From the NCBI GenBank assembly GCA_963924565.1, contig OZ004613.1, positions 22,506,001 through 22,570,000 of the forward strand: DNA of 64,000 bases, given 5' to 3'. The notes under the pieces are model-generated. The model worked only from the letters and a program-made list of their open reading frames with translations, searched no databases and was not told where the DNA came from. Source of the stretch: Ascidiella aspersa. Taxonomy: Eukaryota. The position numbers and the translations under genes are program-made. Positions 5,360 through 41,041 of this stretch are shown in pieces; position 1 is the stretch's first letter; every line of letters starts with the position of its first letter.

Positions 5360-5443
5360 TCAGAATAGGCCGACTTTTAGAGAAAGATTTTTGCATGCAG
5401 GTATGACGTGATCTTTTAATAGTTCCATCAATGACTTGCGCAC
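5360..5443 (-). CDS. CMSS1: CMSS1 terminal exon
   Basis: tttcag|[27 protein letters not shown]. Confidence 0.92.
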   Translation of the reverse strand: MRKSLMELLKDHVIPACKNLSLKVGLF

Positions 5444-8400
5444 CTGAAATAAAGCATATATTTGTTAAATGCTACAGCTAGAAGGTACTAATAATATTGA
5501 AGTATAACGATATTTGTAGGAAAAGGTTAGCGGGGAACAGTAAAACAGCCGCTTTGTCTGCTTCAAATGAGAACAACCCTAAAAAAACCTATAGCTGTTT
5601 AAATTATGTAATAGAGTAGGCTGCAATATTGCAAAATCGCTATAACAATTGCAAATAACCAAAAGCAAAGCAGCCAAGTGTAGAATGAGGACCAAGTGTA
5701 GAATGAGGACCAAGTGTAGAATGAGGCGGTTGTTTAATTTAGTCATTTTCAACTGGATTTTCTTTCGCCAATAATACCGTACTGTATATTCCATTGTTCC
5801 AAACTGTATTTTTGCCTATCATGACTATGTTAAAGCAAACTGTTTACAGGTTGACTATCTAGTCTTATCCCATTAGAAAATATGTATAGGCTATCCTGTG
5901 ACTTTTTGCAAAAAGCAATTTCAGCCAATTTAATCCAATCGTACCTCTTCGATAACGTCCTAATAATATGACATTTAAACTTACTTTCAACGTATTGGAA
6001 CTTAACTTTTACAAAATAAATGCACTGTATGTGTAATGCATATCTGGAAATAAACCCTGACAATTGTTAGCCTAAAATATAAGAATTCCGTTACGTTATG
6101 TTAGATTTTAATTGCACACCCCAGACACCAAATTTCAAAAGATATCTCATTCTTTATAACGTATCGTTTTAAAGTAACTTCGTATACGGCAATGTTTTGA
6201 TGTAACTTTATAAGGTTATATTTGACAATATTCCTCCTACCCTATCAAAAATCCTGAAACCGCCCTTAGGCATATGGTTAAATTGGAATTTTTGAAATTG
6301 CAGTTCTAAGCAAAAATGTCTAAGACAATTAGTGCATCCAAAGAATCAAAAAGTCCGACTTTTAAATTTTGAGGTCTTGGAAAATACACTAATTTGACTT
6401 AACAAATGTGCATAAGAAGTTTAAGTTTAACAATACTTGATCCACACAAACCCAAAGGTTACCAGCACCCTATCCCAAATAATGTGCGTTGATTTAATAA
6501 AGACATAAACGTTTAAGACCCCAATACCTCAATTTGTTACGTAACAATCCTATATACAATGGATGAGGAACTATCTTATGCCCACCCGAGTTTGGGTTTT
6601 TTCCCAGCGTTCAAATATTTATTAAATTAATGCACATTATTTGGGTTAGCGTTTGGGTTCTGGTGGGTCAGGTGTTAATAACCACATCTCACATTTTTTG
6701 CTATCTTTTGTGAATTCACAGCGAGTATTAAAAGGTCCAAACTAGTGCATTGCCACGACCTCAAGGTCAGAATTTTTTGCCCTTGGATGCCCTAATTGTC
6801 GTAGACCTTTTTGCTTAGAAATGCACTAATTTCTAAAAATTAGGTGATTTGCTTTAGCTTTGGAAAGCTTGTTTACTTTAAGTGTGGATTTCCTATGTTT
6901 TTGTAAATATAGCTTTTCCGGTGGAAAAGGCTGCTTTGGATTGCAAGCTATGGCCCAGATGTCGACTACAGTCTGGTTTACGATTTACCGATACCACAAA
7001 ATACTAAGACGCACCAAAAATCCCACTTGACAACGTGCATTGTTCAGATCTGACAACATTGGACAATACAACCGGTCATTTTCTTTAAAACAATAACCTA
7101 ATTGTAGCGCTTGGGCAGTGTCGCGAAAATTACCTCGGGTACGTCCATGATGGTTTTGCGTTTGACGTCACACCAATTCCAATCGATGACGAAAGCTCGC
7201 GTGTGTTCCAGTGAAAGCATTTCTAACGAAAAATAATTTCTATTAATACCGTTTGCTAACAAAATCGGATACAATTTAGTTAGCAATGCTAGGTATTTGC
7301 AAGATAATGAAAATGTCAAATTTTAAAACAAATAAAAAATGGCTTGTGTTGAGACGAAATACTAGTCATGTTTGGAGCCAATATTGCTGTACAAAGTAGG
7401 TTAGTATGTCACATTGGGGTTTTAAACAGGGTTTGGCGTGTTGCCAATTCAATATGGTTTGGATTTTTAAAGGTAAAGAAAGTATCAATATATTGCTTTA
7501 ATAAAACACTTATCACTTACTAGTATACTAATGGTAAAAAAATATATATATTATTTTGTTTTCTACGCAATACAGAAGGCCAATAATCAAAATGTTCAAT
7601 ATTATGAACTTAATGTTGTCTAATTTTCATAGAAAACACTTTTTTTGATCTGAAACTCTCGGAATGCAAAATGCGACAAAAAACTGTTTTATCTTGTAAC
7701 CTACGAAGTAGGTTAACTAACAGTCCCAATTGAAATCCGTTGAATGGATTTAAACGGTATTTGACAACAATTTTATTCGCAAAACATGAGCAAAAAACGA
7801 GCAAAGCGCTAACGGCAATCAATTTACAGGAAGCCAAGATCCACTCGGACATGCGACGCGCAAAAAAACAAACAGGTAAGTTGAAGTATCGAAACACTGC
7901 GCATACACAAAACGAAAAACTTGTATGTACTCAGGTTTGTCATGCTTTTTACAGGCGACGAAGAATAAACGAGAGAAATATAATAAAAGCGATTAAACAT
8001 AATTAAATATAGGGTAATGGTTCGGGTGAGTTGGCAGTGGTGAGCACCGTATCAGCGCAAAGTTTCTTCATATTGAGCATTGAAAGCAGTTTTAAAAAGC
8101 CGAAAAGCAAAAACAGAAGAGCTAATTCAAACTTCTGCAGGTTAAAACCTTGGGCTGGTGAGTGACACCGCTGAGAATCAAAGTTTTATTTCGCTGGAAT
8201 CCAAAGGCGGAACTCTTGATCTGCAAAAAAACAACAACTAGCGAAATCGAGTAAGCTGGTGTTCCTAGCAAGCTCTTCGAAGACTTGGGGTACAAAAAGA
8301 CGTACTTGCCGCGTTCACATGGAGCAAATAATTGCCTTACACAAATAGTACAAGCTCTTCGGAGACTTCGGGCGCAAAAAAACGTTCTTGATGCCTTGGA

Positions 8401-11400
8401 GCCGACTCCACGGAGCAAATAGTTGCCTTACACACATAGTATTATAAAACGTGAAAGCAAATTAAATCAATCCGTTGTGTTGCAAGTGTGGCGGTGGTGG
8501 TGGCAGGTCTGAGGGAGATCGAACCGGTTGAGACCGGTTTTCCAGGCGGGTCGACTCCGAACCGGAACTAGAAAGAGTTGGACTGTCCCGGGACGACCCA
8601 CTGTCCGCCCTTTGACCTCTGTTGTTGTTGTCTAGTGATGACGTGGTCGATTGGGCCTCGTCGATTCCGCTGTCCACGCCCGATGTCGTCACACCCGGAA
8701 GCGATTTGAGCGTGTGCGAGTTTGGGCTTGATGTGATTGACTGTATGTAAAACACATAGTTTTATCATTTATTATTGTCGATACAAACCCATTATTTATT
8801 TAAAAAACTGTATCACGCTATAGAAGTGATTTTATTAGAATACCTTTAAGGCCTCAAATTGTTACAAAATTATAAATGGGTTCGACCAACCTTACGATAA
8901 AGTAATGATTTATCGTGGAAAACTTTGTTTACATAAAAAGCCTAATCACGTATTTTTTTTTTAAGATTTTTAGGTCGCTATAGTATTTCATAGAATTCTG
9001 AACTCAATCTTTAGACTGTTTAATAAAAGCAAAAAACACGTTTTTCAAGATATGTTTTTATAGTTTCCTTACATACGAAGGCGTTTAAACTTGTTTGTTT
9101 AATTTGATCAAAATATAGCGTTTAACGATCGTTAGTATAAATTATGTAAGCGTGGTTTTCCAAAGTTATTAGTTCGGGTTAGTTTTGCAAATCTTAAGGG
9201 ACGGTGAGCTTAAATTTTTTTCAAAAAGTGTCCCCTACTGAAAAAGGTTGGAAACCACTGCTCTAAGGAGACGGATTGTGTGGTAGCAGAAATAGGCTAC
9301 TTACGCTGGCTGGTTCTTTTCCGGCTTCATTTGCGACTCTGATGTCGTCGAGAGAAACGTCGTGGTACATTTGAGGAACAGACACTGGTTGGCGCTCGCG
9401 GTACTTTCGTCTCGGAACCCATTTGCCTGAAGGAAAATTATTACGTATTTATGGAATGTTTTGCGTTTAAATGGCATGCAGCACGATTTTAAAACAAGCG
9501 GCATTATATAAAAGGTATGCACGCAAAAAAAAACAGGAAGAATTATATGTTTTATGCAAACCCTACTTGTCATCTACGGCATGGAAACGTCAGTTCAAAA
9601 ACATCGAGAATTTTTTCGTTTTCAAAATAATGCTATTAGAGTACAAGCTAGGGTAGCATTATTTTCAAATGATAAAATTAGATAGTGAATGCGATGATGC
9701 TAATATATGTAATGACGCAATGTGCATTGCGGGTAGAAGTGAGTCTCTAGGAAATATGGAAAAGCTAGTCGCCACGACTTTCTTATCTTTGCAACAATGT
9801 CAGTTTGACCTTACGTCAAACGAATTTATTATGTCACAAGAAAAGTGTTTTGCTAATGTGTATAAATCAAATGTTTTACTTTTTTACAAAACGTCGCTCG
9901 ACTATTCCGAAAAAAAAACAAGTTGTGCGATTTCGCGAAGGCCTCGTAAAGATCCAAACTTAAAAGTTTGACCAGACATCGAATAGAGCAGCTAGAACCC
10001 TATCACTGATTAACAAGAATCTCACCTGTTTTTCTTCGTCGCTCGGAACAGCAGAACACCATCGTCAAAATAACCGCCAAAAGAATAAGAGCTGCGACCA
10101 CGGCGAGCGCAATAATGAGGGTGAGGCTGATTACAGCAATGCGGGGTTCCCGTGGGGCCGGGCCGGGGTCGGTCACGTTGCCCCAGTGGGTGCTGTTACC
10201 GGTGAGGTTGACGTTGGAAGTGGTGAAGGGGAAGGGCGTGCTTCCTGTGCAGCAACGAACAGAAGGTTAGAAGGCGTTCGACAAAATTGTATGACTGATA
10301 TGATATTGGTTGAACCCTTGGTGTGGGTTGTATAGGCTTAAGCTATATAGGCTTATTAATGTTAAAGTATTACATTTTGTGCAGCTCTTTAGGTAAAATT
10401 TATTGAAAAATGTTGTATGCAGGAATGGCGAAAAAATGTGTACCTTTGTTATTAAATGAGGAATACACGATTCAAAATTCAACTTACCAAGTTTTTCGGT
10501 TGCGTTTTTGATAGTTTGCGTCGTAACAGAAACCGCTGCCGCCGTTGTCAGACCCGGGGAAGTTTTAGTCGACGGGTCACTTGTGACGACATCACTAGTG
10601 ACGACATCACTGGTGACGTATTCAACGGACGTTGTAGCGACGTCATAGGTGCTTTGTGGCACGGTTGAGGTAGTTGCACCGGCGCTCGAAGTTTCAGAAT
10701 CAAAAGATGTCGAGGTGGCGGCGGACTGTGACGTAGCGGGATACGACGTGATGGGTTGTGACGTGATGGGTTGTGACGTAATGGGTTGTGACGTAATGGG
10801 TTGTGACGTGATGGGTTGTGACGGGACGGGTTGTGACGTCACCATCTCTGACGTAGTCGTCGTTTGAGGTTGCGAGGTTTCGGTTTGAGTGGTTTCGCCA
10901 ACCAGCGGGACGGTGATAGTGGAAGTGTATTGTAGAAGGGTGGACAAGGTTGAAATCACCCTTGTGGTGAACTCGCCAAGCGTGGTTTCACTTGGCGTGC
11001 TTTCCACGGTCGTGGGCGACGTTTCCGGGGCAACAGAGGTGGTCGGGAGGCAGGGGGGACACACCTCGGTCTCGGTCTCCCTTCCCGGATCGCCGTTGGG
11101 ATGCTCGTAATCCTCCACGTGTCGACAACTGGCAGGAAAGACTTCCGAGCCGAACTTGTTGACGCACGTGCGCACTCTGCAATGCAAAAGTATAGTCGGA
11201 TGGTCATCTTTTAGTTTTTTTGTTCTTTATGCTTTTAACAGATGTGTGCAATCATACCGATAAGCAACCTATCGATAAAAACTTTGTCTGCCTGAGAACG
11301 TAAGAGTAAATTTGACTAAACTTCAGTTTTTGTAACACGGAACCTTAGTTTCAACTTGGGTTTCCCATTTCGGCATTGCATTTAAAAGCATATACTTTGG

Positions 11401-14400
11401 TGGCAACGATTAAATTCGGTGAACTGTCTCCAAATCTTGGTTTAGCAAATTAAAGTTAGTTACGTCCGGTTGTTAACCAAACTCTTTTTTTATTTACCTT
11501 TCAGGTAGAATGCACTAAACCATTTAAAGGTAAAACGTTAAGCGATGAAACAGTTCTGTTTGTTTCGCTTAACCCCAAATTTAGGTTTGATTTTGCGGAA
11601 ATTAACAAGACACAGACAAAAGTAGTTCTTTACCACCATATATTAAAGGAAGGCCAGTTTCATGCAAGTTACAAGAGCTAGGAAATATTGAGATTAGGCA
11701 AGACCAAAACTGAAAATAAACGCTTTCCGGGCGTCTTTGTGTTACAAAATGACTTTTAGTTTATTTTCAACAGCCCTTAATCTTTTTAATATCGACATAC
11801 GGGCACGCTAAACAAAAATAGAAACACGCATTTGCATACCAGCACTTAACGATAATTGCCCTACCAAGGGCGCCCCAAATAGAGTACACGATAATGCAAT
11901 TGCGTTGTAATGGCACGTGTAAGACTCCGGCCCGTGCGAAAGTTTTCCATAATTAGACGTGTTCGAGTCAGCGACGCGTTAATCCGGCAAAAACGCGCCT
12001 GTTACTTTTCATGGATGAAGCACACAAACGTGAGATGAGGGCGTTGTTTCAGCAATTGCCCCCAAACGAAGCAATGGCGTCGACGCAAAATGCATAGGTG
12101 TCTGCGAACCGGGGACTGCGCCGTTTTTTTTTTTTAAAGAAAAACGACCATTAGCCATATCGGGCCAGCGCTAATCTTGTCTCTTATTTAACCGAGTGAA
12201 TGTTGTTACATCAAGTGAAGAATGTTATTCCCAAAGCAATATATTTATGCCTTGTCATTCATTTTTATCGTACTTACAACAGCCTGCTTAAAACCCCAAA
12301 ATTATTGTCCATAAACAGTAATAAAACCAAGTATAACAAGCTTAGGCTCTATGTAGCGCAAGGGGTCAGTGATGGCTCAAACATGCTGCTGATGGAACAT
12401 TCGGTAAGGAAATCTCCGGCCGATGGTATCAATGGACATCATAGGCCTCCTTCCAAATGGCAACATGCCACTTGGGGTTGCCTAGCTATCAGCTATAAGC
12501 ACTTTTTAATTAAACAATCGAGATGACAGTTGGGTAAAAATCTTACCTGGTCCTGGTGCAGACATATGGCGGGTAGCAGGTGCTCCACCCGGCCCACTCC
12601 ATCCAACGATAGCAGTTCTGTTCGTCGAGCGAGTTATTGCAGTCGCGGATGCCGTCGCACACGCGAAAGTTGCCGATGCACTGCGCCGTGGTGGTGTTGG
12701 CGCCGGCGTGGGCCAGCAGTACTTCAGGGGCGACGTCGGTGCGCTGGTAGACCGAGCAGCGGAACTGCATGAGGCAGTAGCGACAGTTGGACTCGTCAGA
12801 GCCGTCCAGGCACTGTTTGGTGCCGTCGCATACCTGAAAGGACAAATCGAGCGGATGGAATAGGTTAGTGGTGCGCGTTTGCGTATAAGGCTAAGCCAAG
12901 GGTCACCAAAATACGGCCGGTGAACCAAGTCCGGCCCGCGCATAATAATGAAGATAAGTGCAAAATCCCCTCGAGCCGTGGAAGATAAATATCGACCTCA
13001 ATTCCTGATCACTATGATCAGTAGCAGCAGAATAGTCTAGAAAAGCTAGTAATTCGGGTCAGACGCTATATTTATAGGCGATAAAAGATATATATATATA
13101 TATTTTGCTGGCAAAGGCATCGTCAGTACCATTTGAATAAGATATATTGATGATGCCTTGTGCCTGCCAAAAATATTTATTTATTTTAAAATTTACAAAT
13201 ATTGTCAGACTTGAATTACTAGCTTTGCGAGACTATTCTGCTGAAGATAAATAAAACACAGTTGAAATGTTGCAGGATGAGATTTCGAACTAAATATGGG
13301 TGAAATTATGAACTGAACGACACTTTCAAAAAAATCTGACTTCGGTTTTCGGAGTTATTTATATTTCTTTCGTTTAACAATGACTAAGTTAATTTGACAC
13401 TGACTTTATATCGGGGCCGTCATTGCAGGGAATTACATTTATAGGGCCCTTTATGAAAAAAGTTTGGTGACCAATTTACACATTGCACAAGAGTTATTAT
13501 TGTTTTTACTTTATTTTAAGTTGATACATAGACGCACATCTTGAACTATACCAAAACCACATACTTTAGGCCATAACAGATTATGCCCAGACGGTTTAAT
13601 TAACGTCTACCGCTAAAATTAACATAACTAATAAACTAAATCCACAGGACGGAGTCCTTAAACCGGTTGACATTTGTTTGTACTCGATAAAGGTTAAACA
13701 CAAGCCTTAGATCAGGGATGTCCAACTCAAACATGCCGGCGTGCTGATTTTTATCCTATAACTTCATCCCGTGCCAAAGTTTAGTAATATAATTCTTTCT
13801 AATAATAAAAGCGTTTTTTTACAAACAATAAAAACATGTAGTTAGCAGTGCGCATTACTGCATCTAAATGTCCGTCGGTGAGCTGACTTTTGCTTTTTGT
13901 TTCTTCACACCAAACTTTATAGTTATGTGAATGCTATAGCCTCCACTACAATATAATGTTATAGTATTAGAAGTAATTGTTAATTGTCGTGATGGCAGCG
14001 AATGTTTTGTCGTGATGGCAGCGAAATGTTATTGTGAATAAACAATGAAAATTTACTGTATAAAAAAATAGGTATTTTTTTTACAATTGGCTGAATAGCA
14101 AATTAACTAATTTAGGGGGGCTTGCGTGCCATTTTTTATTTGGTCGCGTGCCACGTGCCGCTTGTTGGACACCCCTGCCTAAGATGATAAAATGATCACG
14201 AGTTATAGGCACGTAAAGGCGAAATTGGGGTAACGACCAGAACAGTATTTTTGTCTGCAAGTTGGAATTCATTGTTAATTTTTTGCATAACAACTCTTTG
14301 AACATGTATTTATTTTGTACGAGTTGTTTTATCGTTTGTTGCGTGTTGTTTTCGCATTGTGTTAACTATTGCGTTGTGAATCACTTAACTTTTCGTGCCC

Positions 14401-17400
14401 CTTCACTTCTGCACCCCACCTTCACTGGCTTATACCTTATCTTACCATGTTTGTTGTTAACGCCTTTTTGTCTGTAGTTAGTGTAGCCATCACACTTTTT
14501 TTGAATGACGTATAGTTTTGAAAAGCTTTATGGTAGTCGACAGTCAGGTTGGGCAATGCTGGGACAACCACCTGTTTAGATCGTCGTCGTTTACGCCCTA
14601 TTTCAATCTGTTACGCGCTTCCATTGTTTTTTGTTTTACATGTTAGTTCACCTATCGCCCTATATTATATACAACACTGATAAGTCTCGTGCAGTGTTCG
14701 GAGATCCGACAGGCCGTGAAGTAGAACGTTCTGAAACTTTGGCGTAACATTTACAATTACATGCAATTGCGAGTCTGAATAACAAAGGTCGACATTTGAC
14801 GCCTCAAAGGCCAAAGAAAAATGCACCGATGACAGTTCTTTACAAAAATTCTTCTAGACATTTTGAAGTCGGTCAACTTAGCGATTGTCCGAAGTAGGCC
14901 TTTGCTTCATGCTTGGCTAATGCAAATTTAGAATTTCTTAAGGGCGAATAAATTTCACAAACAAATCACGATGGCAAATGTTGCACGAAAAAAAGATGGC
15001 AAATGTTGCACGCCGGTAAAGCCCTGCCTGAGTTCAACCAAAATGAAAACGCATATAACACACTAAAACACAAACGCAAAGAACTCAATTTCATCGCATT
15101 GCTACCGTCACGACAGTTTATAATCCCCAGGCGACTGTTGCATTCTATTTACAGCTAATAAAACACTTTAATTCCCCGCGATTGGCCGGGGAAAGCAGAC
15201 CGGCAGAGTTAAGCAGGCCAACTCGAAAAGCTTAGACGAGAATTAGGCGTCGTCGACCTTAATGGCCCGGGGTAATTACTTTATTGACGTATTGTCCGAG
15301 CGAAAATGTGGGCCAGCTAAGTGGGTCCTTGCATATGGATCAAACGTGGGATTTGCTTTTGTAAGTGCCGGATTGCATTAATGGGGTCGTACAAGCTATA
15401 CGCTGCTGACCGTAGAGCGTTGGATTGCGTAAACTGTTGGATGTTACTTTTTCCCATGTGTGTACGTTTATCATGCAGACCTCTGGTGATCCCATAAGTG
15501 TATTTTAATGTAAGCAAAGTATTTTACAACTGTTATGCCAGGAGTTCTGGGGCGCTTTCGTGAGAAAAAATGGCACAATACAGTTGTAAACAGGTGTACT
15601 CCCCCAAAAGTAATATCTGCAGTTAACTCGATAAACTTAAGCCTTTGTATAATATACCGCGATAAGGCTTTTCAGACGCTTTAGTGAACAACGATATGCC
15701 ATTCACATCAGTATATCGAGTCACAAAATATACAGCAAATGCAGACCCCCGATGCCTCATAAGTTACGATAAGATTCGAACTTACAGCCTAAGCTCCCAG
15801 AGTCCCAGCACATGATCAACGGTATATGATGTCATGCCAAAAATGACCAACAATTTATCGGCCAGAAATAAAGCATTCCAATAATTGTGAAAATTCCCAA
15901 ACAGCGTCCATCACTCAAACCATACACTATAAGGTTGTGATGGAGGCCGAATCTAAATGGCAGCAAGATGTTACATCATGCTTACCTGTGACTTGGGAAT
16001 GCATCGTTCATGTGGCTTGCCGCATCGAAATCCGTCGCACCAGCCTCTGTGCCAGCTGCAGCCCGTCTCGTCAAGTCCCAGTGCGCAGTCCTTTTGGCCG
16101 TCGCACACCTGTCAAAGGGCAAGTGCGTAAGATATGAGCGTCAGCGGTGTGTTTCAAACGCCACATGCGAATATAAGGATATAACACATGCAACGATACG
16201 AAGCCCTCCTCGTTTAAACGACAAAGATTTAAATAATTCCGAAACCGAAAAACTATTTTTGCAAAAAAAGTACCTAGCTGTTTGATCCAATACTAAAAAG
16301 GTTTGTTTATCAATATTTCCCCTATCTATTAGGAACAAAGCGATTTAACGTTAAAGCACTGTTCGGTATTTTGAAACTATGGTAAGTTCCCACAATCAAA
16401 GAGTAACTTAAATTGTGCCCTTTATTGCTACTACTCTTTGGCTGCATCTACATTGATTGCGACCTATTAATTATCAACGATAATAAGTTAGCGATGTTTG
16501 ACATTCATATATGATTTTCAAAAGTGTATTTTCATAAGAATTTAACTAAGAATTGATAGAGGTAAATTTGTGTCATTGAAAAAAAACCCAGATAACTTAG
16601 CCTGGAGAAATGACTTGAAATCAGGTATATTGGGTGCAATGTATATACATTATACACAAGGCTTTCTTATTTTTAATGTAGCAGAGAATGGTTGGTGAAA
16701 ATCGCGAAAGCGCATTTACGGCGTTCATAAATAATGTGGTTATGGTCAAGGGCGACAGGTTGTGGGCAGTAAACAGTGGAAGCGCATCAATATTTAATTA
16801 ACGGACAGCGGCGTTTAGAGTCCAGTCGCGAATAAATAAGCAGCACAAAAATTCAAACATTTAAGCAATATCAAAACACAAGTCGCGCAATATTTACAAA
16901 TTCGCCAGGTAAAGATTTTGGCTTAATTGGGTAGCTCAACATTTTGGCTTAAGCAGAGTAAACCTTATAATTTTGAAAGAAGAGTTTATAGCGATGAAAC
17001 CTTTTGCTTTTTCCCGAACGTCTTTCGAAATACTTTCCTGTAAGATGGCTTACCTTTTGCTGAGAAATGCACGGCTTTGAATCGGCGTGATGCAGGCAGG
17101 AAAACTGGCTGGTGTTTTGACAATCCCGGCATCCCAGTTCATCACTACCATCCGGACACTGGTTCACTCCGTCGCACTAAATTGCAAAGATTTTTTTTTC
17201 GTTTACTGGTTTTTAATCAACTTTGTAATTTTAAATTATACGCAAATAAAACCCATCAGTGCGAAGGTTAGAGCCTTCAGTTAAGAAGTATTTTATTTAC
17301 TAGTAAATGCTCTGTATAGAACATATTGTGTTAATTATACGTCATATTTAATAGAAACAGCACGTTGCCTTAAATATGTTGACCAAGACTACATTGCTTT

Positions 17401-20400
17401 ACGTTACTTTTTCGTTTTATATTCACGCTTTTATTTACTTTAAAACGTCGTCAAATGAATCTGCTGCTTATTACAGGAATTGTCGAAACATTTGTTTTAC
17501 ATTGTAAACTATTTAAATCCGTATAAGTACATTGGATTAAGTTAAAACCTTGTGAAAACATCAAATACCGCTTGGCTTATAGTTGTGAGACAATTTGAGA
17601 GGATTACAAAAGAGACCATTTGGCACTAAAAGCAAAACTTGTTCTGTCGCGTTGGTGACACGTAATCCTACTCGTTTATTATAGTAGCATGTCGTGGTGT
17701 ATTGCACGGAATGTCTCGAACCATTACGCGGGTCCCACGGGCATAGTTTGGACGTGTAAGACTAGAAGAAAACTAAAAGGATAGTAAAATTTTTCACAAA
17801 AAAACGTACTAGGCGGTTAGTTTTTAAACGATTATATTCATATTAACGCAAGCCATCGGATAAATATTACCTGACATAACGCGACGGACCCTAAAATATT
17901 TTTCTATGCAGTTGTTTTTCAGACTTGGGAAACAGATCGAAATGCAAGAGTGCGATAGAGATAATCAGCGCTGGTTTGTTATATTAGTAAAAACGTATGA
18001 AACGAAAATAACAAACTATTTTTTTAAGTATTGCGAAAATCTTGCTCATAACCAATCGCAATACATTCCACCATGTAAAACTACTACAGTCGTCGCTCTA
18101 ACTAAATCAAACAGCGACTTATTTTACGGTGGTGGCGCATACAATGAGAAACACTGTTGTATCTGAACACGGCGAAAATTAGCTTTATATAGGTTTACCT
18201 TAATTCCGGCGGCGCAGGTGGTCGAGTTGTCGGCGCCGCTGACCGGACTGCAGTTTCCCTTGGCCCGCAGAACACCGCCGCAGCATTCCGACTTGGCCGC
18301 CTTGCTTAGGGAAAGGAGGGTCACCGAGCTTCTGGAACATTCGACGCAGGACTGGGTCGAGTCGTCAAATTGAACCCAACCGTCGGGGGCTATCGCGGGG
18401 TCGTAAAGTGTCGGCCGGCACCACCTTACTTCAGCCATGGTGGGAACACATAGACAGGAGACCATGCAGGTCACAATGGCGCAGAATGCCGTCGTTTTCA
18501 TTTTGAAGTCGATCAACGAAAGGTTTATTTTGTTTCGCTGAAAATTCCGTTCAAGTGCAACCCAGATATTGGTTTGTAATGATTTTCAGTTGTTCTCGGT
18601 TTTCTGTGCGTTTGAAATTTTTTTCAGCTAATTTAATTTTTCTTTGCTTTAATTTTCTTCGTTTGTCTTTGCTTGTTGGGCAACAACAAAAAATAAACTT
18701 ATCTCTGTACATGCAAATTCGAGAGAAAAACAATGGGTTGATTCCAGAGTCGCAACGGATAACAACGCAATTATAGGCGATTTAAAAAAACTTATTTTGT
18801 AAATCTGCATGTGGCACAATCTACATACTACGCGGTCTTTATCAATTCGAAAGACCGGAAGCCTATATTTCACCCTTTCAACAGTAATGCTATGAATCCT
18901 TTTTAATATACCCCAGCATGACGCTGGTTTCGTAATACGAAGTTCAGATGTACATATGAATAAACCGTTCTTGGCAAACTTCAGGCTTTCTACCTTACAA
19001 GCTCGTATAGAATCAATAAACAAACTATAGCAACTGCCCTAACCGCATACGCTATATATACTCGTTTGACTTTAGCTTAAGCAACTCAATCATTTTTTTC
19101 TTAAGACTTGAACGCTATGAAGGCTCAATAAAAGATAATCGTTTGTTGCACCTAGGTCCTGATTCAATTTGTTCTCATCTCGTAATATTACACTTAGATG
19201 TCGAACGCAAACAGTGGAGGCAATTAGAAGGGCGGATCAACATTTGCTGACAACAATATCTGCATGCTGAACCAGACTTTAACTTGGTCTTTCGCTTAAC
19301 CTGCTCTTTACGCAAATGAATAATTTTACATTGAAACTGAGTTCTGGAAAACGTCTGTGCGTGACCAATAACCTCGCATCGTACTTGTAATACCCTATTA
19401 GGCATGTTTGGCTACTACTGATCTAAGAAAAAAAAATTGTTCTATCGTTGCGGCTAGAATTTTTCATATACGCGCTTCCCTAAATTGAACTAAATTGGCG
19501 TTTTTTTTCACCTCGTTTGACCTTACCTGATTGGGTTCTGCTGACCTTAAGCAATTTTCATCTTTTATTGTTTCGGCTATAAATTATAGATATATGCGCT
19601 TCCCTGACTCTGATAGCAAAGCACAAAACTATAACGGGACGTATAGTCCAAAAGTAAAAGTATACCGCAATCCTATAAAGTGCGCTACAACTTGCAAACG
19701 CGTCACAATTCCCACGCACAGATCACAATTAAGACAGGATGCCGACGGCAAACCAGCTCACGGCACTACCCCGGGGAGACACGGCGTCCAAATCGCAAAT
19801 AAACTCGAAACGGGCCGCCGCAAATTTCCCGCGCAGCATCCAACGCGCGACTGATGTGCGTCGTGTCGCCGCAGCAGCAAATAAAGCGCTTTGGCGGCAC
19901 GCGACAGGAGAGAAGTCGCCCTGTGCCGAGAGAAAAACGCCAGATTCCGGCCGTTTTGGACTGCCTTGCCTTCTAAAACCTGAAACGCCGCTCGTTGGGC
20001 GCGAAGCAAGGTCGGCGACACCTTTTCCTTTGCCGGGCGACCGACTTTTGGCGGATTAAGTGAAGTCGTTGAACTTCGCACGCGCGTAAATAGAAGAGCA
20101 TGCTAGGCTGGTATAGGTTTACCGTTATTTCGGGTTTCCGGAAAATTACAAACCGACAAAAAAATTGTTAATTTAGAAATAAATAGAGCACTCAAGTACA
20201 AACAATAATATATCGCTAAAGTACTGTAATACTATATTTCCATCGCTCATTGGTTCGTCCTATATCAGCAAACGTTGTGGAAAACGAAAAAATACGCCAT
20301 TTTTGCTATGGTTTTATTATATGCTTGTGTTTTAGTTAACGACATGTTTTCGAATGAGGCTATACAAAAAAGGTGTGCGCGATTCTCGTGATTTCTACAA

Positions 20401-23400: not shown

Positions 23401-26400
23401 GCGTCAGAGCATTTAAACAACACTTGTGGCATACAATGGCCGGACTGCCCTTGCATGTTTTTTCGATGCTGCATGTCCTACACAGGACATAATTCTCCCG
23501 AATGCAATGTCGTTCGGCATGACATAAGTTTTTTTCGCAAGAAATCTCTGGTCTTTGAAACCTTTCGAGAAAAAAGTTGCCTATGCCATAGCTATTTGGG
23601 GAAAGTGCGAAAGCGGGGTTGTTACTGAGCAGCGTGTAAATGCACAAAACGTGGACGACAGCGATTCTCGTTTCCGAAATGCGTTGCCGGTACAATTTGC
23701 GAACATTACGGGAACACGTGTAGAAAACCACGCCCTTAGTATTTCAGTCTTTCTGGACGATTATGGTCCTTGCGGAATTACAAAGAACGTGATCATGGTC
23801 TGTTTGCATTTAAAAGCTGGACAAATGTGCTTTACTCTCCGATTTTGAAGATTATAATTTCTTTTAAAGGGAGAAAATTCATATTATTTATGATAATTAC
23901 AGCGGAAAATTAGTAAGATAACGTTATAACTTTGCTTGTTGGCATGTTGTCCCTGTGTAACATATTTTTTAGTGTAAAATTAACAAGAGACCGTTAACGG
24001 TCATTGCTTTCGGGTCACCAAAGTTAACAAGAATGAGGTAATATAGAGGATTTTTGCGAATATCAGTTATTCGAAAAACACACACGCATTAATAACATCT
24101 GTCTGCGCCTTTTTATGAAAATGCTTCTAGTTTTGGTGCTTAAAAGGCTAGGGTAAAAGCACGTTGTTTGTAATAGCCTTTAAACAAAGATATTACCTTA
24201 AATAACCCTTATGCGATGCGGAAAAGCGGTGACTTAAATGCTCACAAATGGATGTGAATGTCTTCCGTTCAAAACAATTCCGATTCGACGAAACACAAAG
24301 TTCGAACTCAGGTGACCTTACGCGCGGCGCTCTTTGATGTCGTATCGAATTGGGCGCTGGTCGAGTTTGTCTTATTATGACGCAACACATCAAACATATT
24401 CGAACCACCAACGCAAAAATAGGCATTTTAAAAACGCCAGCTAGGCGTAGAAAATATATTTTGCCCAATTGATGCCATAAAATTTCTCCTCAATATAGTT
24501 GATAATGAAGACTCGTGTTGGTAACATTTCCTCTACGCAGGCTAAATTACGTAGAAAAACACACACAAAAAATGGTATCTTATTTTTTTAAACCAGATCC
24601 TTGTTGTCCATACGTATTCCATCTAAAACCAAATTGTTGATGCCATAACTGTAAATAACCACCCTTATTACCGTATATAGGAGTTACAGAAAAGCAATTT
24701 AAAAGCTGGTGTTGAAAATGAATAAGGAGTTACGAAACTTAAAAAAAAAGACACTTACACTTCTACATTGGTTTAGATATTTCCTACTACGTAAAAAACA
24801 AATACGACTGCAGCCTAATTCGATATTGCTACTATGTTACTAAAAAAGTGTAATTTAAGAAAAATATTCCCCACTTGGGTAGAACTGATGGGGGAAAGGG
24901 TTTACCCGGTGAGAGTACGGTGCTTGAGGAAATGAGTAGACGAGTTTAACCCAGTGCTCCTAATTTGTTTACAATAAATGTAAGACGTTAGGCGTCTTAT
25001 ATTACAGTGGTGATAAGTGGAGGTATAAAATCAATTCGTTAATGACATAATCTTAATAGTGTGGAAATAACCTTGGTTATATAAAAAAAACAATCTTGGT
25101 TAGTAAAATAAAATTATATTTTCACGCAAGGCCTGTTCCAAATTGGAAATGTTAGCGGCACTAAAAAGCAATATGTGGTTGGGCCAACGCCAACGCAAAT
25201 CTGAAGGAGAATCCACTCAAATGCGATACACGATTGCCGTGCGAAAAACGCCCAAAAATAGCGCGGGGACGAAGAAAAAAAAGGAAACGGATTTCTAGGT
25301 ATAAAGTCGGATAAAGTTTTTTTAACTGGATTTGCGCTTTCATCATGTTAACTCGAGAGGATGCCAACTTAAAAGACAGTTTCGCATTTCATGAATCATT
25401 TTTTGAGGGCGTCATTGTTTGTTGACGTCATCAATGACGCGTTTTCCTGAGGTTCCGGGGTTAATGTCCTTAAAATGGGGTTCGAGTTTGTATTTCTGAC
25501 GATGAATATATTTCTTGGCAAACCCCGAGTCTGATTTTTTTGCTTCCGGATAAGGTTTGCTTGACGCTGGTGTTTGGTAATATTTCGGCAAACAGCGCAT
25601 AGCGGAGTAAGTGGATGTTAATCATAAGATTTTAGTAAGCTTACTTACAAAAAAATAATGTTTGCAATTATTATATTTTATTTGGCTTTAGGTCAACTAA
25701 TTTGTGCAAGTGATCATTAACAAGAAACACTCTGTTGTGGTGAAAAGTATTAATTTTGTGCGTCGAATAATAGATATCACCACGAACTCAACAATAAAGA
25801 CTAAAAAACTAACCACCAACTAACTAAGCAATATTTAAGAGCTTTCTGTGAGTTACAAAACATACGCTCGTATATGCAAAATAAATAAAACAACACGATG
25901 TATCTTTGTAACGATAACAACAATAAGTTTTTTTCGTTTTACAATATTGGTTGGGGACCTGCATCAACAGATTTTTAAAGTTTTATAATTAAAAAAATAG
26001 TTAAACATCCCTTTTAAACTGTTTTTTTTTTCATGTGGTAAAGAACTTGATACGTTGAATTTAAGTCAATGTTAATAACAACCAAAAAGGTTTTGATCCA
26101 CAGGTAACCCTTGACATAGCAATCCGGTTACTTCAACAATATCAAACTGGCGGGGTCGCGAAATTGCGCTACATCACCTCGCATGCTTAAACTCTATTGT
26201 TTTTCGCTTAAAACTCGCAAACGTCCCGCTATATCTCCGGCTCTAAATAAGGCAAGAATGGGCGCGAGGCCCTGAACAGCCTTGCCGTGCCGAGTTACAG
26301 CAAATTACAAGCTTATTTACTCCCGGGAGCCACATCAAACGAAAGTAACACGAAGAGGAAGGATTTGTTGACCAAACGATCAAAGCGCTTCGCCTTTTTA

Positions 26401-29400
26401 CTTGTGAAGAAATTCGAATTGAATTCGGTGTTAAACTTAGCGGCGATATCACCACGCGGAATCTTGTTTCGAACAGTTCGAGGTGGGTGTAAGCCGTATG
26501 ATTTCAAGTTTGACAACGCGTGGCGAAAACAATGTAAATTTCTGCAAACGACGTGGTAATGTTGCACATCAATGACGACATATCATATACAGGAGCGAAC
26601 ATTTGAAAACAACGGGGAAGAATGTATTGGCTTTCATATTTTAGTATGGGCTTTGATCTTCTTATTACGTTTTACTACAACCTTCAACCATTAGGCTCCG
26701 AAGGGAAAGGATATTTTAAAAAGCGTGTTTTCATGACGTTGAAAGAAACGCTAGCGGTTAACTTTCACATAATCTAAATAATGTCTAATTCCCTTATGAT
26801 ATTTCCAATACATTTCGATTTTAACTTCAACTATATAAGAAACCAACGGGAGTTTATCAAACCACTTTAAGGACAACAAGAAGAAAAATAATAAATACTA
26901 ATAAGTTCGGCTGCACGATTGACTGTACTATGATACAATATGTGAGTATTTATTTAAGGTCGGCGTATTTGACATAATATCAGCTACTTGTATTAATCCA
27001 ATAGATCCGGTTGCATATAGGTGAATAAAAATGCATGCCAACATACTGGACATTGCTATAGCCACGTAAATAGCCCCAGGTCAAAAAATCAAAAAAACCT
27101 TACTTATTGTGATACATTTGTTTTCGGTACATGCTGAAAGAGCAAAACAACGAGCAAAACCGTTATGAGTTAAAACTATTCAATGAAATATTTTTCAGTT
27201 CGTATAAAATGGAAAATTAGTTAACTTTTATGAATAAAAAATACTCACACACAGGCTTTTGAGTTTGGGACCTTGACTGCCTTTTTATAGACCCGTGTGC
27301 TTAACAGACGCAAAAAACTTGATAATTTGGGTTTGTCGTTACGTCATCGACACTAAATGTCTGCCTAACACAAAAACTTATCCCCACTAATGGTTTTAAA
27401 CGTATTTCGTAAAATTTACGTCCATAATTTTATATGTTGACATCCATAGTTTGAAAGTTAAACACTTTAAAAACCGGGAATTTTGAGAAAGGCCTCTATT
27501 AAGTGACACGATAGAAACACGATAATAGTATTGTCGAAATTAAAAATACCAAAGTATTTATTAGGGGTTAATTACGGTAACAACTTTTTTCGACATTGGT
27601 TAAAACAAGGGTTATCGTGGCAATATCAACACGATTAATGTAGTTTTACAGAAGCGCGAGTAGTTCCTTTGCTTTAAATGTTTTTTTCATTTAGATCGAA
27701 TTTAGTTGGGTTCTATCGAAAGAGATGGTGACCAGCAGGCTTGCAAACATAGATATACATAAATCATGCGTCAAACTAATTATATTTTTATACCAGTTTG
27801 TGAACAATTTATACAAAGTGGATAACAAGCAAAGAATACGACAAAGGTCTATTAATTAATCGATCAAAGCGTAATTGTATTAATGTCAAATCGTATCGCC
27901 TTGTATTGAGGCCATAGGAAGGTCACTCTTGTATTCTAAGTGTTTTATGGCATGATTAGAGCAACTAAAATGCCACCTTCGCCCTATACGCGTCGTTACT
28001 GACCAGGCAATGTTAATTCATCCGTTTAGTATATCAAGCATATAAAAAACAAATTTGCGCAAATGATCAGGCTGTATATGGCCGACCATAACGTGCTGTA
28101 ATACAGAAAACACAATTGCTCATTTTTTTTGCTAAAGATTCGCGTTTCAGTATGGCAATTACGCTCTCTTTTTTGCAAAACAGACCGACAAACAAACAAG
28201 ATGTTCAAAAAAACACTTTTTTGTTTAATTTCAGTGGGGAACCCCTAGAATTATTAGGTTGCGTCTAAAAACCCCACAAACCAAATAGTGCATTTAGTCT
28301 TCACACAATTATATCAATTACTTATCTAAAGTTCAAAAAAACGTGCTAAAAAGCCATTTTTCGTACAAAACAGCCTAACAAATGTTGTTAAAACGGGACA
28401 TTTGTACCATGACTACTCACTTTTTTACTGTAAAACAGGTTTATTCATAGCTATTCAATTGCAAAGCAATGCAAAAAAGTAGAAAAAAATTTTTTTCAGG
28501 GGGAGAATAATTTATTTTTTTCAAAAATTTTAGCCTAAATCTGAATTTTCAAATTGACGTAGCACGGTCAATACTGAACCAAACGTGCTTAGATTTGTTT
28601 TGTCAGATTTTTAGACGAAACCTAACAATTCCAGGGGATCCCCACTGAAATTTTACAAAAAAGTGTTTTTTTTAACAACCCTATTGTATAACCATGATTT
28701 ATCATATCGGCAGAACGAACAGGCAGCCATGCATACAATACGCTGGGCAAAGTCGTGACGAGTACCTGATTGAATAATTTAAAACTCAATTTGCAAAACC
28801 CTGTAATTTATTTTTTATTTCGCAAATAGCGGAAAGTTATTATTCGAATAGTCGTTTCATTTTCACAGGTAAACACATATTTTAAAGGTAAAAATTTGCC
28901 TTAGTTCAAATTGGTTTTAAAATCAACAGTTGATCAACTGGCAGAAGATTTTCCACTTTATAAAGATTTTTCCTAAATGAAAGACTGCATGTCATCGTTG
29001 TATTACAAAACATAAAGTCGATACCTTGTTGTTGCGTTAGTTTAAATATGGTTTTAAAATCAACACTTGATCAACCGGAAGAAGATTTTCCATTTTATAG
29101 AGATTTTTCCTAAATGAAAGATTTTCAAAATATAAAGTCGATACCTTGTTGTAAAAGGGCCTTGATCCTGGCAGGAGTTCCCACCGCAAGATGCGTCACG
29201 TTTTTTCGGAGTGCCTTGGCTTGCTCTTCTATCTTCATGTGTCGCGAGAAGAGCTTTAAGGACCTGGATTGCCGACAAAACGATTGAATTGAGAAGTTCA
29301 AGTCGACTTGAAAAAGGGTCAAGGAGAATTCGGCCACACTTGTGACGAACTTCGAGACGACAGTACAATGGTACTCTGAACGCAGGTGATTTAACGGCAT

Positions 29401-41031: not shown

Positions 41032-41041
41032 TTGTCCGCAT
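41032..41041 (-). CDS. CMSS1: Candidate short alternative first coding exon of CMSS1 (ATG CGG ACA A|GTAAGC)
   Basis: A-rich leader aaaaca-ATG, strong donor, phase 1 compatible with exon 2. Only 10 nt, so it could be chance. Confidence 0.4.

What the first reader, a model, noticed from the sequence alone, without database searches (positions are those of the whole stretch)
7223..29144. A complete 8-exon receptor gene nested on the SAME strand inside a 21.9-kb CMSS1 intron
Seen: CMSS1 exon 6 (29145-29263, ends phase 1) continues in frame at 7134-7222 (DWNW motif) and 5360-5443 (LKVGLF*). I found no other copy of these two exons in between. The whole LDLa/TSP1/TM gene (18501-8462) lies between them on the same strand. 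Established: most nested genes are antisense, and same-strand multi-exon nesting is less common. Inference: full-length CMSS1 needs Pol II to read through the inner gene's poly(A) site and the spliceosome to skip 8 good exons. Phase-1 junctions also allow in-frame chimeras (CMSS1 exon 6 to TM exon 10244; receptor exon 5 or 6 to CMSS1 exon 7).
Basis: partly seen in the sequence, partly recalled or inferred. Interest (0 to 1): 0.85.

Follow-up and report, generated by a model that had tools for sequence, protein, structure and literature searches.

The report
Receptor gene nested inside CMSS1 intron
In a sea-squirt genome, an intact 8-exon membrane-receptor gene sits on the same strand inside the 21.9-kb last-but-one intron of the ribosome-biogenesis gene CMSS1; this is a real but ordinary example of a gene within a gene, and I could get no expression data for it.

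Summary
CMSS1 (minus strand, 8 exons, 244 aa) has exon 6 at 29145-29263, exon 7 at 7134-7222 and exon 8 at 5360-5443. The joined model runs end to end with ascidian CMSS1 proteins without a gap (65% identity to Clavelina lepadiformis). Exons 7 and 8 are single-copy in the genome, and intron 6 holds no second copy of them.

Intron 6 (7223-29144, 21,922 nt) contains the whole coding sequence of a single-copy, 8-exon, 714-aa gene on the same strand (18501-8462). That gene encodes:
- a signal peptide;
- four LDLa modules;
- a WxxWxxW segment that Pfam does not call TSP1;
- a Ser/Thr/Pro-rich stalk;
- one transmembrane helix;
- a cytoplasmic tail.

The genome is ascidian-type: it carries 573 copies of the Ciona-type spliced leader.

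Same-strand nested genes are well documented: about 29% of nested genes in Drosophila, and roughly half in mammals. This case is therefore a new member of a known kind. The phase-compatible "chimera" junctions occur at chance frequency.

Read-through, exon skipping, or SL trans-splicing of the inner gene out of host pre-mRNA all remain inference.

Other unchecked notes in this scan list several more same-strand nested genes in this genome, on other DNA.

The parts
41032..41041 (-). CMSS1 exon 1 (10 coding nt, ATGCGGACAA|GTAAGC, ends phase 1)
   Evidence: Frame-consistent with exon 2. This is the weakest part of the model, since no homology covers it.
36785..36900 (-). CMSS1 exon 2 (acidic stretch followed by KKKRRRK)
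   Evidence: Splice sites and frame. Aligns to the basic stretch of the orthologues.
31046..31163 (-). CMSS1 exon 3
   Evidence: tblastn with P0003 residues 55-102; splice sites.
30799..30861 (-). CMSS1 exon 4
   Evidence: tblastn with P0003 residues 96-113; splice sites.
30304..30439 (-). CMSS1 exon 5
   Evidence: tblastn with P0003 residues 114-160, E 1.6e-12; splice sites.
29145..29263 (-). CMSS1 exon 6, ends phase 1; its donor AAG|GTATCG is the weakest of the 14 donors in the two genes
   Evidence: Pfam CMS1, E 6.9e-8; 76 CMSS1-type hits in a search of 1.84 billion proteins; donor comparison.
7223..29144 (-). CMSS1 intron 6, 21,922 nt, GT...AG, the host intron
   Evidence: The window contains no N.
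7134..7222 (-). CMSS1 exon 7 (contains the DWNW motif)
   Evidence: tblastn E 7e-9; single copy in the genome.
5360..5443 (-). CMSS1 exon 8 with the stop codon (...KVGLF*)
   Evidence: tblastn E 5e-5; single copy in the genome.
18199..18501 (-). Inner gene exon 1: ATG, signal peptide, Cys-rich N-terminus and the first half of LDLa module 1
   Evidence: Unique in the genome.
17054..17176 (-). Inner gene exon 2 (second half of LDLa module 1 and first half of module 2)
   Evidence: Pfam Ldl_recept_a, E 0.0029; model.
15986..16108 (-). Inner gene exon 3 (second half of LDLa module 2 and first half of module 3)
   Evidence: Pfam Ldl_recept_a, E 7.7e-4; model.
12547..12833 (-). Inner gene exon 4 (second half of LDLa module 3, all of module 4, and the start of the WxxWxxW segment), ends phase 2
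   Evidence: Pfam Ldl_recept_a, 37.1 bits against a cut-off of 24.1; model.
10488..11176 (-). Inner gene exon 5 (rest of the TSR-like Cys segment and the Ser/Thr/Pro-rich stalk with 15-nt TSQPI repeats), ends phase 1
   Evidence: tandem 15-nt repeat at 10712-10861.
10026..10244 (-). Inner gene exon 6 (N-glycosylation sites, transmembrane helix, RRRK stop-transfer), phase 1 in and phase 1 out
   Evidence: hydrophobic segment at residues 540-578.
9305..9426 (-). Inner gene exon 7 (cytoplasmic), phase 1 in and phase 0 out
8462..8740 (-). Inner gene exon 8 (cytoplasmic tail and stop codon)
18502..18544 (-). TTTTCAG| acceptor-like site (18544-18538) followed by a 36-nt leader before the inner ATG; candidate cis- or SL trans-splice acceptor (inference only)
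   Evidence: Sequence read.
19501..20250 (.). GC-rich segment (GC 0.50 against about 0.37 in the flanks), unique in the genome, 1.0-1.7 kb upstream of the inner ATG; candidate inner promoter or 5' exon region (inference)
   Evidence: Composition; single copy; no Pfam domain.
7772..8190 (-). Two AATAAA signals, 272 and 685 nt after the inner stop codon (8190-8185 and 7777-7772); they lie 550-970 nt upstream of CMSS1 exon 7
24847..24989 (-). Decayed copy (76% identity) of the CMSS1 exon 5 acceptor region (matches 30402-30544) inside intron 6
   Evidence: only these two copies exist in the genome.

Best explanation
This is a genuine host/nested gene pair in an ascidian genome. The single-copy ribosome-biogenesis gene CMSS1 has a 21.9-kb phase-1 intron between exons 6 and 7. 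The whole coding region of an unrelated, single-copy type I membrane protein gene lies inside that intron on the same strand. That protein has a signal peptide, four LDLa modules, a TSR-like segment, a mucin-like stalk, a transmembrane helix and a cytoplasmic tail. The architecture is shown directly by the sequence. The rest is inference. I think it most likely that the inner gene is a separate transcription unit with its own start inside the intron, probably within about 0.4-1.7 kb upstream of its ATG. Its mRNA may or may not receive the spliced leader at the TTTTCAG acceptor 36 nt before the ATG. It probably ends at one of the AATAAA signals 272 or 685 nt after its stop codon. Full-length CMSS1 mRNA is made when host transcription passes that poly(A) region and exon 6 is joined to exon 7. 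Host transcripts that pick up inner exons would mostly be out of frame (exon 6 ends in phase 1, while inner exons 2-4 start in phase 0) and would be lost to nonsense-mediated decay. Different tissues or timing of expression probably limit the conflict, as described for same-strand nested genes in flies.
For: - The CMSS1 exon chain has canonical splice sites and an unbroken 244-aa frame.
- The model aligns without a gap across the exon 6/7 and 7/8 junctions. Identity is 65% to Clavelina lepadiformis CMSS1 (E 2e-101) and 54% to Ciona.
- There is no other copy of exons 7 or 8 in the intron or the genome.
- There is no CMSS1 paralogue. The only other CMS1-like hit is a bacterial-type DeaD helicase on contig C12.
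- The inner gene has 8 exons, all with AG|GT sites, an open frame of 2,145 nt, LDLa Pfam hits in three exons, four six-Cys modules, one signal peptide and one transmembrane segment. It is single-copy.
- In two related genomes, predicted ORFs covering the exon 6 equivalent (P0001, P0004) stop following the CMSS1 sequence right after ...LLQQ/LLEQ, which I read as the same intron position there.
- The genome is ascidian-type with SL RNA arrays: 573 matches of leader plus GT, against 0-1 for the control pattern.
- Same-strand nested genes are a documented class (PMC3814207, PMC11694760, PMC8527503).
Against:
- There is no read-level check of the assembly.
- No orthologue of the inner gene was found. 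The exon 1 and exon 4 searches were blank, but they could only see proteins of similar length. Its conservation and expression are therefore unproven.
- The inner promoter is only guessed from a unique GC-rich segment and TATA-like strings.
Confidence: 0.75

Rival explanations
1. The inner gene has no promoter of its own. It is cut out of CMSS1 pre-mRNA by SL trans-splicing onto the TTTTCAG acceptor 36 nt upstream of its ATG, and by polyadenylation at its own signal. Each host pre-mRNA would then yield either the receptor mRNA or full-length CMSS1, making this an operon-like unit embedded in an intron.
For: - The genome carries hundreds of Ciona-type SL RNA genes.
- About 50% of Ciona genes are SL trans-spliced, and weak upstream donors favour trans-splicing (PMC11155486).
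- An acceptor-like TTTTCAG sits just before the inner ATG, with no ATG in between.
- The CMSS1 exon 6 donor is the weakest of the 14 donors.
Against: - Acceptor-like AGs are common, so the motif alone means little.
- Ciona operons are defined by abutting genes with under 100 bp between them (PMC2760879). Here the inner ATG is 10.6 kb from exon 6, and the inner stop is 1.2 kb from exon 7.
- A housekeeping nucleolar gene and a receptor are unlikely to share regulation.
- No RNA data are available.
Confidence: 0.12
2. The arrangement is an assembly artefact or a rare haplotype-specific insertion, and in the normal genome exons 6 and 7 are closer together with no gene between them.
For: No read-level validation was possible. 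The intron shows signs of local rearrangement: a pseudo-exon-5 fragment and a tandem duplication of the exon 6 donor region.
Against: - The window has no gaps, and the assembly is highly contiguous, with 308.6 Mb in 75 contigs.
- No long repeats flank the inner gene that could mislead an assembler.
- The inner gene and both CMSS1 3' exons are each single-copy, so there is no alternative placement in the assembly.
Confidence: 0.04
3. The inner gene is a silent or recently dead gene, or a mis-modelled one, so there is no real conflict with CMSS1 processing.
For: No orthologue or paralogue was recovered for exon 1 or exon 4. No expression data exist.
Against: A 714-codon frame that stays open across eight canonical exons, with intact Cys and DxSDE patterns in four LDLa modules, an intact signal peptide and an intact transmembrane segment, is not expected from a decayed locus. 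The blank homologue searches were limited to proteins of 0.55-1.75 times the exon length.
Confidence: 0.05
4. The phase-1 junctions are used to make functional chimeric proteins: CMSS1 exon 6 joined to the transmembrane exon, or the receptor ectodomain joined to CMSS1 exons 7-8.
For: The phases match. CMSS1 exon 6 ends in phase 1, inner exons 6 and 7 start in phase 1, inner exons 5 and 6 end in phase 1, and CMSS1 exon 7 starts in phase 1.
Against: Compatibility (2 of 7 acceptors and 2 of 7 donors) is what chance gives at one third. A nucleolar protein fused to a transmembrane tail without a signal peptide, or a secreted ectodomain carrying a CMSS1 tail, has no evident function. There is no transcript evidence.
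Confidence: 0.03

Closest known systems
Same-strand (parallel) nested intronic genes of animals, as catalogued in Drosophila (PMC3814207), mouse and human (PMC11694760) and across Metazoa (PMC8527503)
   Same: A complete protein-coding gene lies inside one long intron of an unrelated host gene on the same strand. This raises the same questions about intronic polyadenylation, mis-splicing and transcriptional interference.
   Different: In Drosophila, same-strand nested genes are usually single-exon, and hosts of intron-containing same-strand nested genes are less often essential. Here the nested gene has 8 exons with strong splice sites, and the host is a single-copy ribosome-biogenesis gene. 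The organism also has SL trans-splicing.
Vertebrate CMSS1/FILIP1L overlap (mouse Filip1l and Cmss1 on opposite strands, PMC8138604)
   Same: The host gene, CMSS1, is the same and again shares its locus with another gene. A FILIP/CTTNBP2-type gene (CortBP2 domain) is also next to CMSS1 in this window.
   Different: In this window the FILIP-type gene lies on the opposite strand upstream of CMSS1. The gene nested in intron 6 is an unrelated LDLa receptor on the same strand. I recall no LDLa gene in the vertebrate CMSS1 locus, but that is from memory and was not tested.
Ciona operons resolved by SL trans-splicing (PMC2760879)
   Same: [quoted passage not shown]
   Different: Operon genes abut with essentially no intergenic DNA, and the downstream gene follows the upstream gene's 3' end. 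Here the inner gene lies inside an intron, 10.6 kb after exon 6 and 1.2 kb before exon 7.
Small LDLa-repeat type I membrane proteins (for example CD320, LDLRAD3; recalled from memory, not tested)
   Same: A few LDLa modules, followed by a stalk, one transmembrane helix and a short cytoplasmic tail.
   Different: This protein has four modules plus a WxxWxxW Cys-rich segment and a long Ser/Thr/Pro stalk. No orthologue was found here. Each LDLa module is split mid-domain by a phase-0 intron.

Membership tests
CMSS1 / Cms1 (Pfam PF14617) | Match to the CMS1 profile | tested here: inconclusive
   Tested exon by exon only. Exon 6 scores 32.6 bits (E 6.9e-8), just under the 35-bit whole-protein cut-off, and exon 7 scores 11.4 bits. 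The joined protein was not sent to Pfam.
CMSS1 / Cms1 (Pfam PF14617) | Full-length collinearity with named CMSS1 proteins, including the C-terminal DWNW and GLF motifs | tested here: met
   A local blastp of the joined model gave 65% identity over 201 aa to Clavelina lepadiformis CMSS1 (E 2e-101) and 54% to Ciona CMSS1-like. The alignment has no gap at the exon junctions.
Nested intronic gene, same strand | The whole inner coding region lies within a single host intron on the host's strand | tested here: met
   The inner CDS (18501-8462) lies inside intron 7223-29144, and both genes are on the minus strand.
Nested intronic gene, same strand | The inner gene is an independent transcript whose 5' and 3' ends lie inside the intron | not testable with these tools
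Only AATAAA signals and an acceptor-like site can be pointed to.
LDL-receptor class A domain (PF00057) | Profile match above the cut-off, plus the six-Cys and DxSDE pattern | tested here: met
   Exon 4 scores 37.1 bits against a cut-off of 24.1, and exons 2 and 3 give partial hits. The joined protein has four six-Cys modules ending in CDGxxxCxxxxDExxC.
Thrombospondin type 1 repeat (PF00090) | Profile match to TSP_1 | tested here: inconclusive
   Neither half gave a TSP_1 hit, even at E up to 10. The segment is split by a phase-2 intron, so each half was tested alone. Only the [10 protein letters not shown] motif and R-x-R spacing are seen.
Ciona-type operon | Same-strand genes separated by less than 100 bp, with the downstream acceptor abutting the upstream 3' end (PMC2760879) | tested here: not met
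   The inner ATG is 10.6 kb downstream of CMSS1 exon 6, and the inner gene lies within an intron rather than after the host's 3' end.
Ascidian genome with SL trans-splicing | Tandem SL RNA genes carrying the 16-nt leader followed by a GT donor | tested here: met
   The pattern leader+GT gave 573 matches, mostly in 584-bp tandem arrays on C3, against 0-1 for the reversed control. The 16-nt leader length and about 50% usage in Ciona come from PMC11155486.

The most novel reading that the evidence does not exclude
The receptor mRNA is produced from CMSS1 pre-mRNA itself. The spliced leader would be trans-spliced onto the acceptor at 18538, and cleavage would occur at the inner poly(A) site. One housekeeping promoter would then drive two unrelated mRNAs, and each primary transcript would yield either the receptor or full-length CMSS1. 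This would be an 'intronic operon', a form not described for tunicates.
Probability: 0.1. Interest if true: 0.6.

Novelty: new member of a known kind. Interest (0 to 1): 0.27.

Why it matters
As it stands, this is a clean and well-delimited example of a multi-exon gene nested on the same strand in a presumably essential host gene. Fly genomics suggests this configuration is selected against. The organism has SL trans-splicing, so the locus could serve as a test case for three questions: how a chordate relative keeps the two sets of splice sites apart, how it handles an intronic poly(A) site, and whether trans-splicing helps. It does not change what is known about nested genes or about CMSS1. 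It is useful for annotation, because gene finders are likely to truncate CMSS1 after exon 6 or to fuse the two genes.

Tried and rejected
- **Inner gene homologues.** Exon 1 and exon 4 gave nothing. These searches only see proteins of 0.55-1.75 times the exon length, so the blanks say little. The Atlas returned only generic LDLa clusters scoring under 0.8.
- **TSP1 label.** There was no Pfam hit in either half of the segment.
- **Second copies of exons 7/8 or a CMSS1 paralogue.** None was found. The weak CMS1 hit on contig C12 is a bacterial-type DeaD/DbpA helicase.
- **Other content of the intron.** No Rfam family, no tRNA, and no Pfam domain in the longer intronic ORFs.
- **Classical Ciona operon.** Rejected on the distances involved.
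- **Phase-compatible chimeras.** Rejected as a signal because compatibility is at chance level.
- **N-terminal DEWW motif of CMSS1.** Not found on the minus strand between 29 and 48 kb.
- **Joined models.** The joined (spliced) protein models were built only inside local scripts from window coordinates. There they were compared with proteins the tools had returned.


Full report
**What is there**

The window is G000:C7:22506001-22570000 of a 308.6-Mb, 75-contig assembly and contains no N.

- 29145-29263 gives ...[39 protein letters not shown] and leaves one extra base.
- 7134-7222 supplies two bases and then [29 protein letters not shown].
- 5360-5443 gives [27 protein letters not shown] followed by a stop.

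Exon 6 matches Pfam CMS1 positions 156-191 (E 6.9e-8), and exon 7 matches positions 195-222 weakly.

**CMSS1 is one gene that spans the inner gene**

A search of 1.84 billion representative proteins with exon 6 returned 76 CMSS1-type proteins. tblastn of three full-length ones against the window placed collinear minus-strand exons at 31163, 30856, 30443, 29263, 7223 and 5446. For the C-terminal 56 residues, nothing else in 7223-29144 scored better than E about 1.

With splice sites added, I obtain an 8-exon, 735-nt, 244-aa model. Its introns measure 4131, 5621, 184, 359, 1040, 21922 and 1690 nt. A further search seeded with the hit P0003 brought in named proteins. In a local comparison, the joined model is 65% identical to Clavelina lepadiformis CMSS1 over 201 aa (E 2e-101) and 54% identical to Ciona CMSS1-like. 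There is no gap at the exon 6/7 or 7/8 junction.

Several checks show there is only one CMSS1 gene:
- Exon 7 and exon 8 DNA each occur once in the genome.
- The CMS1 profile finds only exon 6 on C7, plus a weak hit on C12.
- That C12 hit is a bacterial-type DeaD/DbpA helicase, not a paralogue.

Intact, conserved, single-copy 3' exons with no alternative copy mean that exon 6 must be joined to exon 7 across 21.9 kb. In two related genomes, predicted ORFs covering the exon 6 equivalent (P0001, P0004) stop following the CMSS1 sequence directly after ...LLQQ/LLEQ. I read this as the same intron position there, so the intron is probably old.

**The inner gene**

Reading the minus strand from 18501, I get eight exons, every one with AG|GT sites:

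| Exon | Coordinates |
|---|---|
| 1 | 18501-18199 |
| 2 | 17176-17054 |
| 3 | 16108-15986 |
| 4 | 12833-12547 |
| 5 | 11176-10488 |
| 6 | 10244-10026 |
| 7 | 9426-9305 |
| 8 | 8740-8462 |

Together they give 2,145 nt and 714 aa. The protein has the following parts:
- a hydrophobic N-terminus (residues 1-25);
- four six-Cys LDLa modules (73-257), with a Pfam hit above the cut-off in exon 4 and partial hits in exons 2 and 3;
- a [10 protein letters not shown]...Cys-rich segment;
- a Ser/Thr/Pro-rich stalk (44% S+T+P) with 15-nt TSQPI repeats;
- one transmembrane helix (about 545-574) followed by RRRK;
- a 140-residue cytoplasmic tail.

Pfam gives no TSP_1 hit for either half of the "TSP1" segment, which is split by a phase-2 intron. 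That label is therefore motif-level only.

The gene is single-copy. I found no orthologue, but the searches could only see proteins of about exon length. The Atlas gave generic LDLa clusters only.

AATAAA signals lie 272 and 685 nt after the stop codon, which is 550-970 nt upstream of CMSS1 exon 7.

**What organism**

CpG is not depleted: observed/expected is about 1.1. The Ciona-type spliced leader followed by GT occurs 573 times, mostly in 584-bp tandem arrays, against 0-1 for the control pattern. The best named CMSS1 relatives are ascidians. This agrees with earlier notes in this scan that call the genome a sea squirt.

In Ciona, about 50% of genes receive the 16-nt leader, and weak upstream donors favour trans-splicing (PMC11155486). 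About one fifth of Ciona genes sit in operons with essentially no intergenic DNA (PMC2760879).

**How it most likely works**

Shown directly by the sequence:
- the geometry of the two genes;
- the reading phases;
- the single-copy status of both genes;
- the integrity of both genes.

Inferred:
- The inner gene is its own transcription unit.
- Candidate start regions are a genome-unique GC-rich segment at 19.5-20.25 kb and TATA-like strings at about 18.9-19.06 kb.
- A TTTTCAG acceptor-like site lies 36 nt before the ATG and could take the leader.

CMSS1 needs read-through of the inner poly(A) region and an exon 6-to-7 splice. The exon 6 donor (AAG|GTATCG) is the weakest of the 14 donors, whereas the inner donors are near consensus. 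Host transcripts that include inner exons 2-4 would be out of frame, because exon 6 ends in phase 1 and those exons start in phase 0.

However, 2 of 7 acceptors and 2 of 7 donors being compatible is what chance gives.

The main rival specific to tunicates is that the inner mRNA is released from host pre-mRNA by SL trans-splicing. The locus does not meet the operon definition (10.6 kb and 1.2 kb spacers), and nothing here tests the idea.

**Comparison with what is known**

Nested intronic genes are common in animals, and parallel (same-strand) ones are repeatedly described:
- In Drosophila, 71% of nested genes are on the opposite strand. Same-strand nested genes tend to be single-exon, and hosts of intron-containing same-strand nested genes are less often essential (PMC3814207).
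- In mouse and human the orientation bias is only slight, and nested pairs involve over a tenth of genes (PMC11694760).
- A survey of 1058 genomes notes many parallel nested genes (PMC8527503).

An 8-exon same-strand nested gene in a single-copy ribosome-biogenesis gene is at the less common end of this class, but inside it. Unchecked notes from this scan list at least four other same-strand nested genes in this genome.

In mouse, Cmss1 overlaps Filip1l on opposite strands (PMC8138604). In this window, a CortBP2-domain (FILIP/CTTNBP2-type) exon lies on the plus strand at 49.1 kb, so that neighbourhood looks conserved. The LDLa gene is a different guest.

**Limits**

- The spliced protein models were assembled only in local scripts and compared there with proteins the tools had returned. 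Database searches were done exon by exon by reference, and the joined step was left out.

**Verdict**

This is a new member of a known kind, of modest interest.

Noticed in passing
window 24847-24989 (minus strand): A 76%-identical copy of 30402-30544, which is the first 38 nt of CMSS1 exon 5 plus 105 nt of intron 4 including the acceptor. It reads [13 protein letters not shown] where the real exon reads [13 protein letters not shown]. Only these two copies exist in the genome, so this is a decayed local duplicate (pseudo-exon) inside intron 6.
   Followed up: partly
window 28896-29152: A tandem duplication of about 130 bp directly 3' of CMSS1 exon 6. The second unit repeats the last 8 nt of the exon and the GTATCG donor (29003-29032 matches 29123-29152 at 93% identity).
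   Followed up: partly
L002 = G000:C12:3506-6826: A 616-aa intronless ORF with DEAD, Helicase_C, DeaD_dimer and DbpA domains, that is, a bacterial-type DeaD/DbpA helicase. Contig C12 of the assembly may be bacterial (a symbiont or a contaminant).
   Followed up: partly
window 49103-49666 (+ strand): This ORF hits the CortBP2 domain (PF09727, E 2e-12, above the cut-off). It marks a FILIP/CTTNBP2-type gene on the opposite strand to CMSS1 and upstream of it. The CMSS1-FILIP neighbourhood known from mouse (opposite strands, overlapping) therefore seems conserved in this tunicate.
   Followed up: partly
window 41032-41041 and 36785-36900: The CMSS1 model starts MRTNAKED... and lacks the (M)ADxLxDEWW N-terminal motif seen in Ciona, amphioxus and the unnamed relatives. 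No such motif is encoded on the minus strand between 29 and 48 kb. The annotated Clavelina protein also lacks it. The 10-nt first coding exon has no homology support.
   Followed up: partly
window 18199-12547 (inner exons 1-4): Every LDLa module is split in the middle by a phase-0 intron just before the (V)CDG motif. This differs from the one-repeat-per-exon, phase-1 layout I recall for vertebrate LDL-receptor genes (from memory, not tested).
   Followed up: no
G000:C3:5.22-5.45 Mb: Large arrays of Ciona-type SL RNA genes with a 584-bp period. They occur in two blocks of opposite orientation, interrupted every few units by spacers of about 8 kb.
   Followed up: no
window 8269-8441: A tandem duplication of about 85 bp (75% identity) in the presumed 3' UTR of the inner gene, just after its stop codon.
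   Followed up: no
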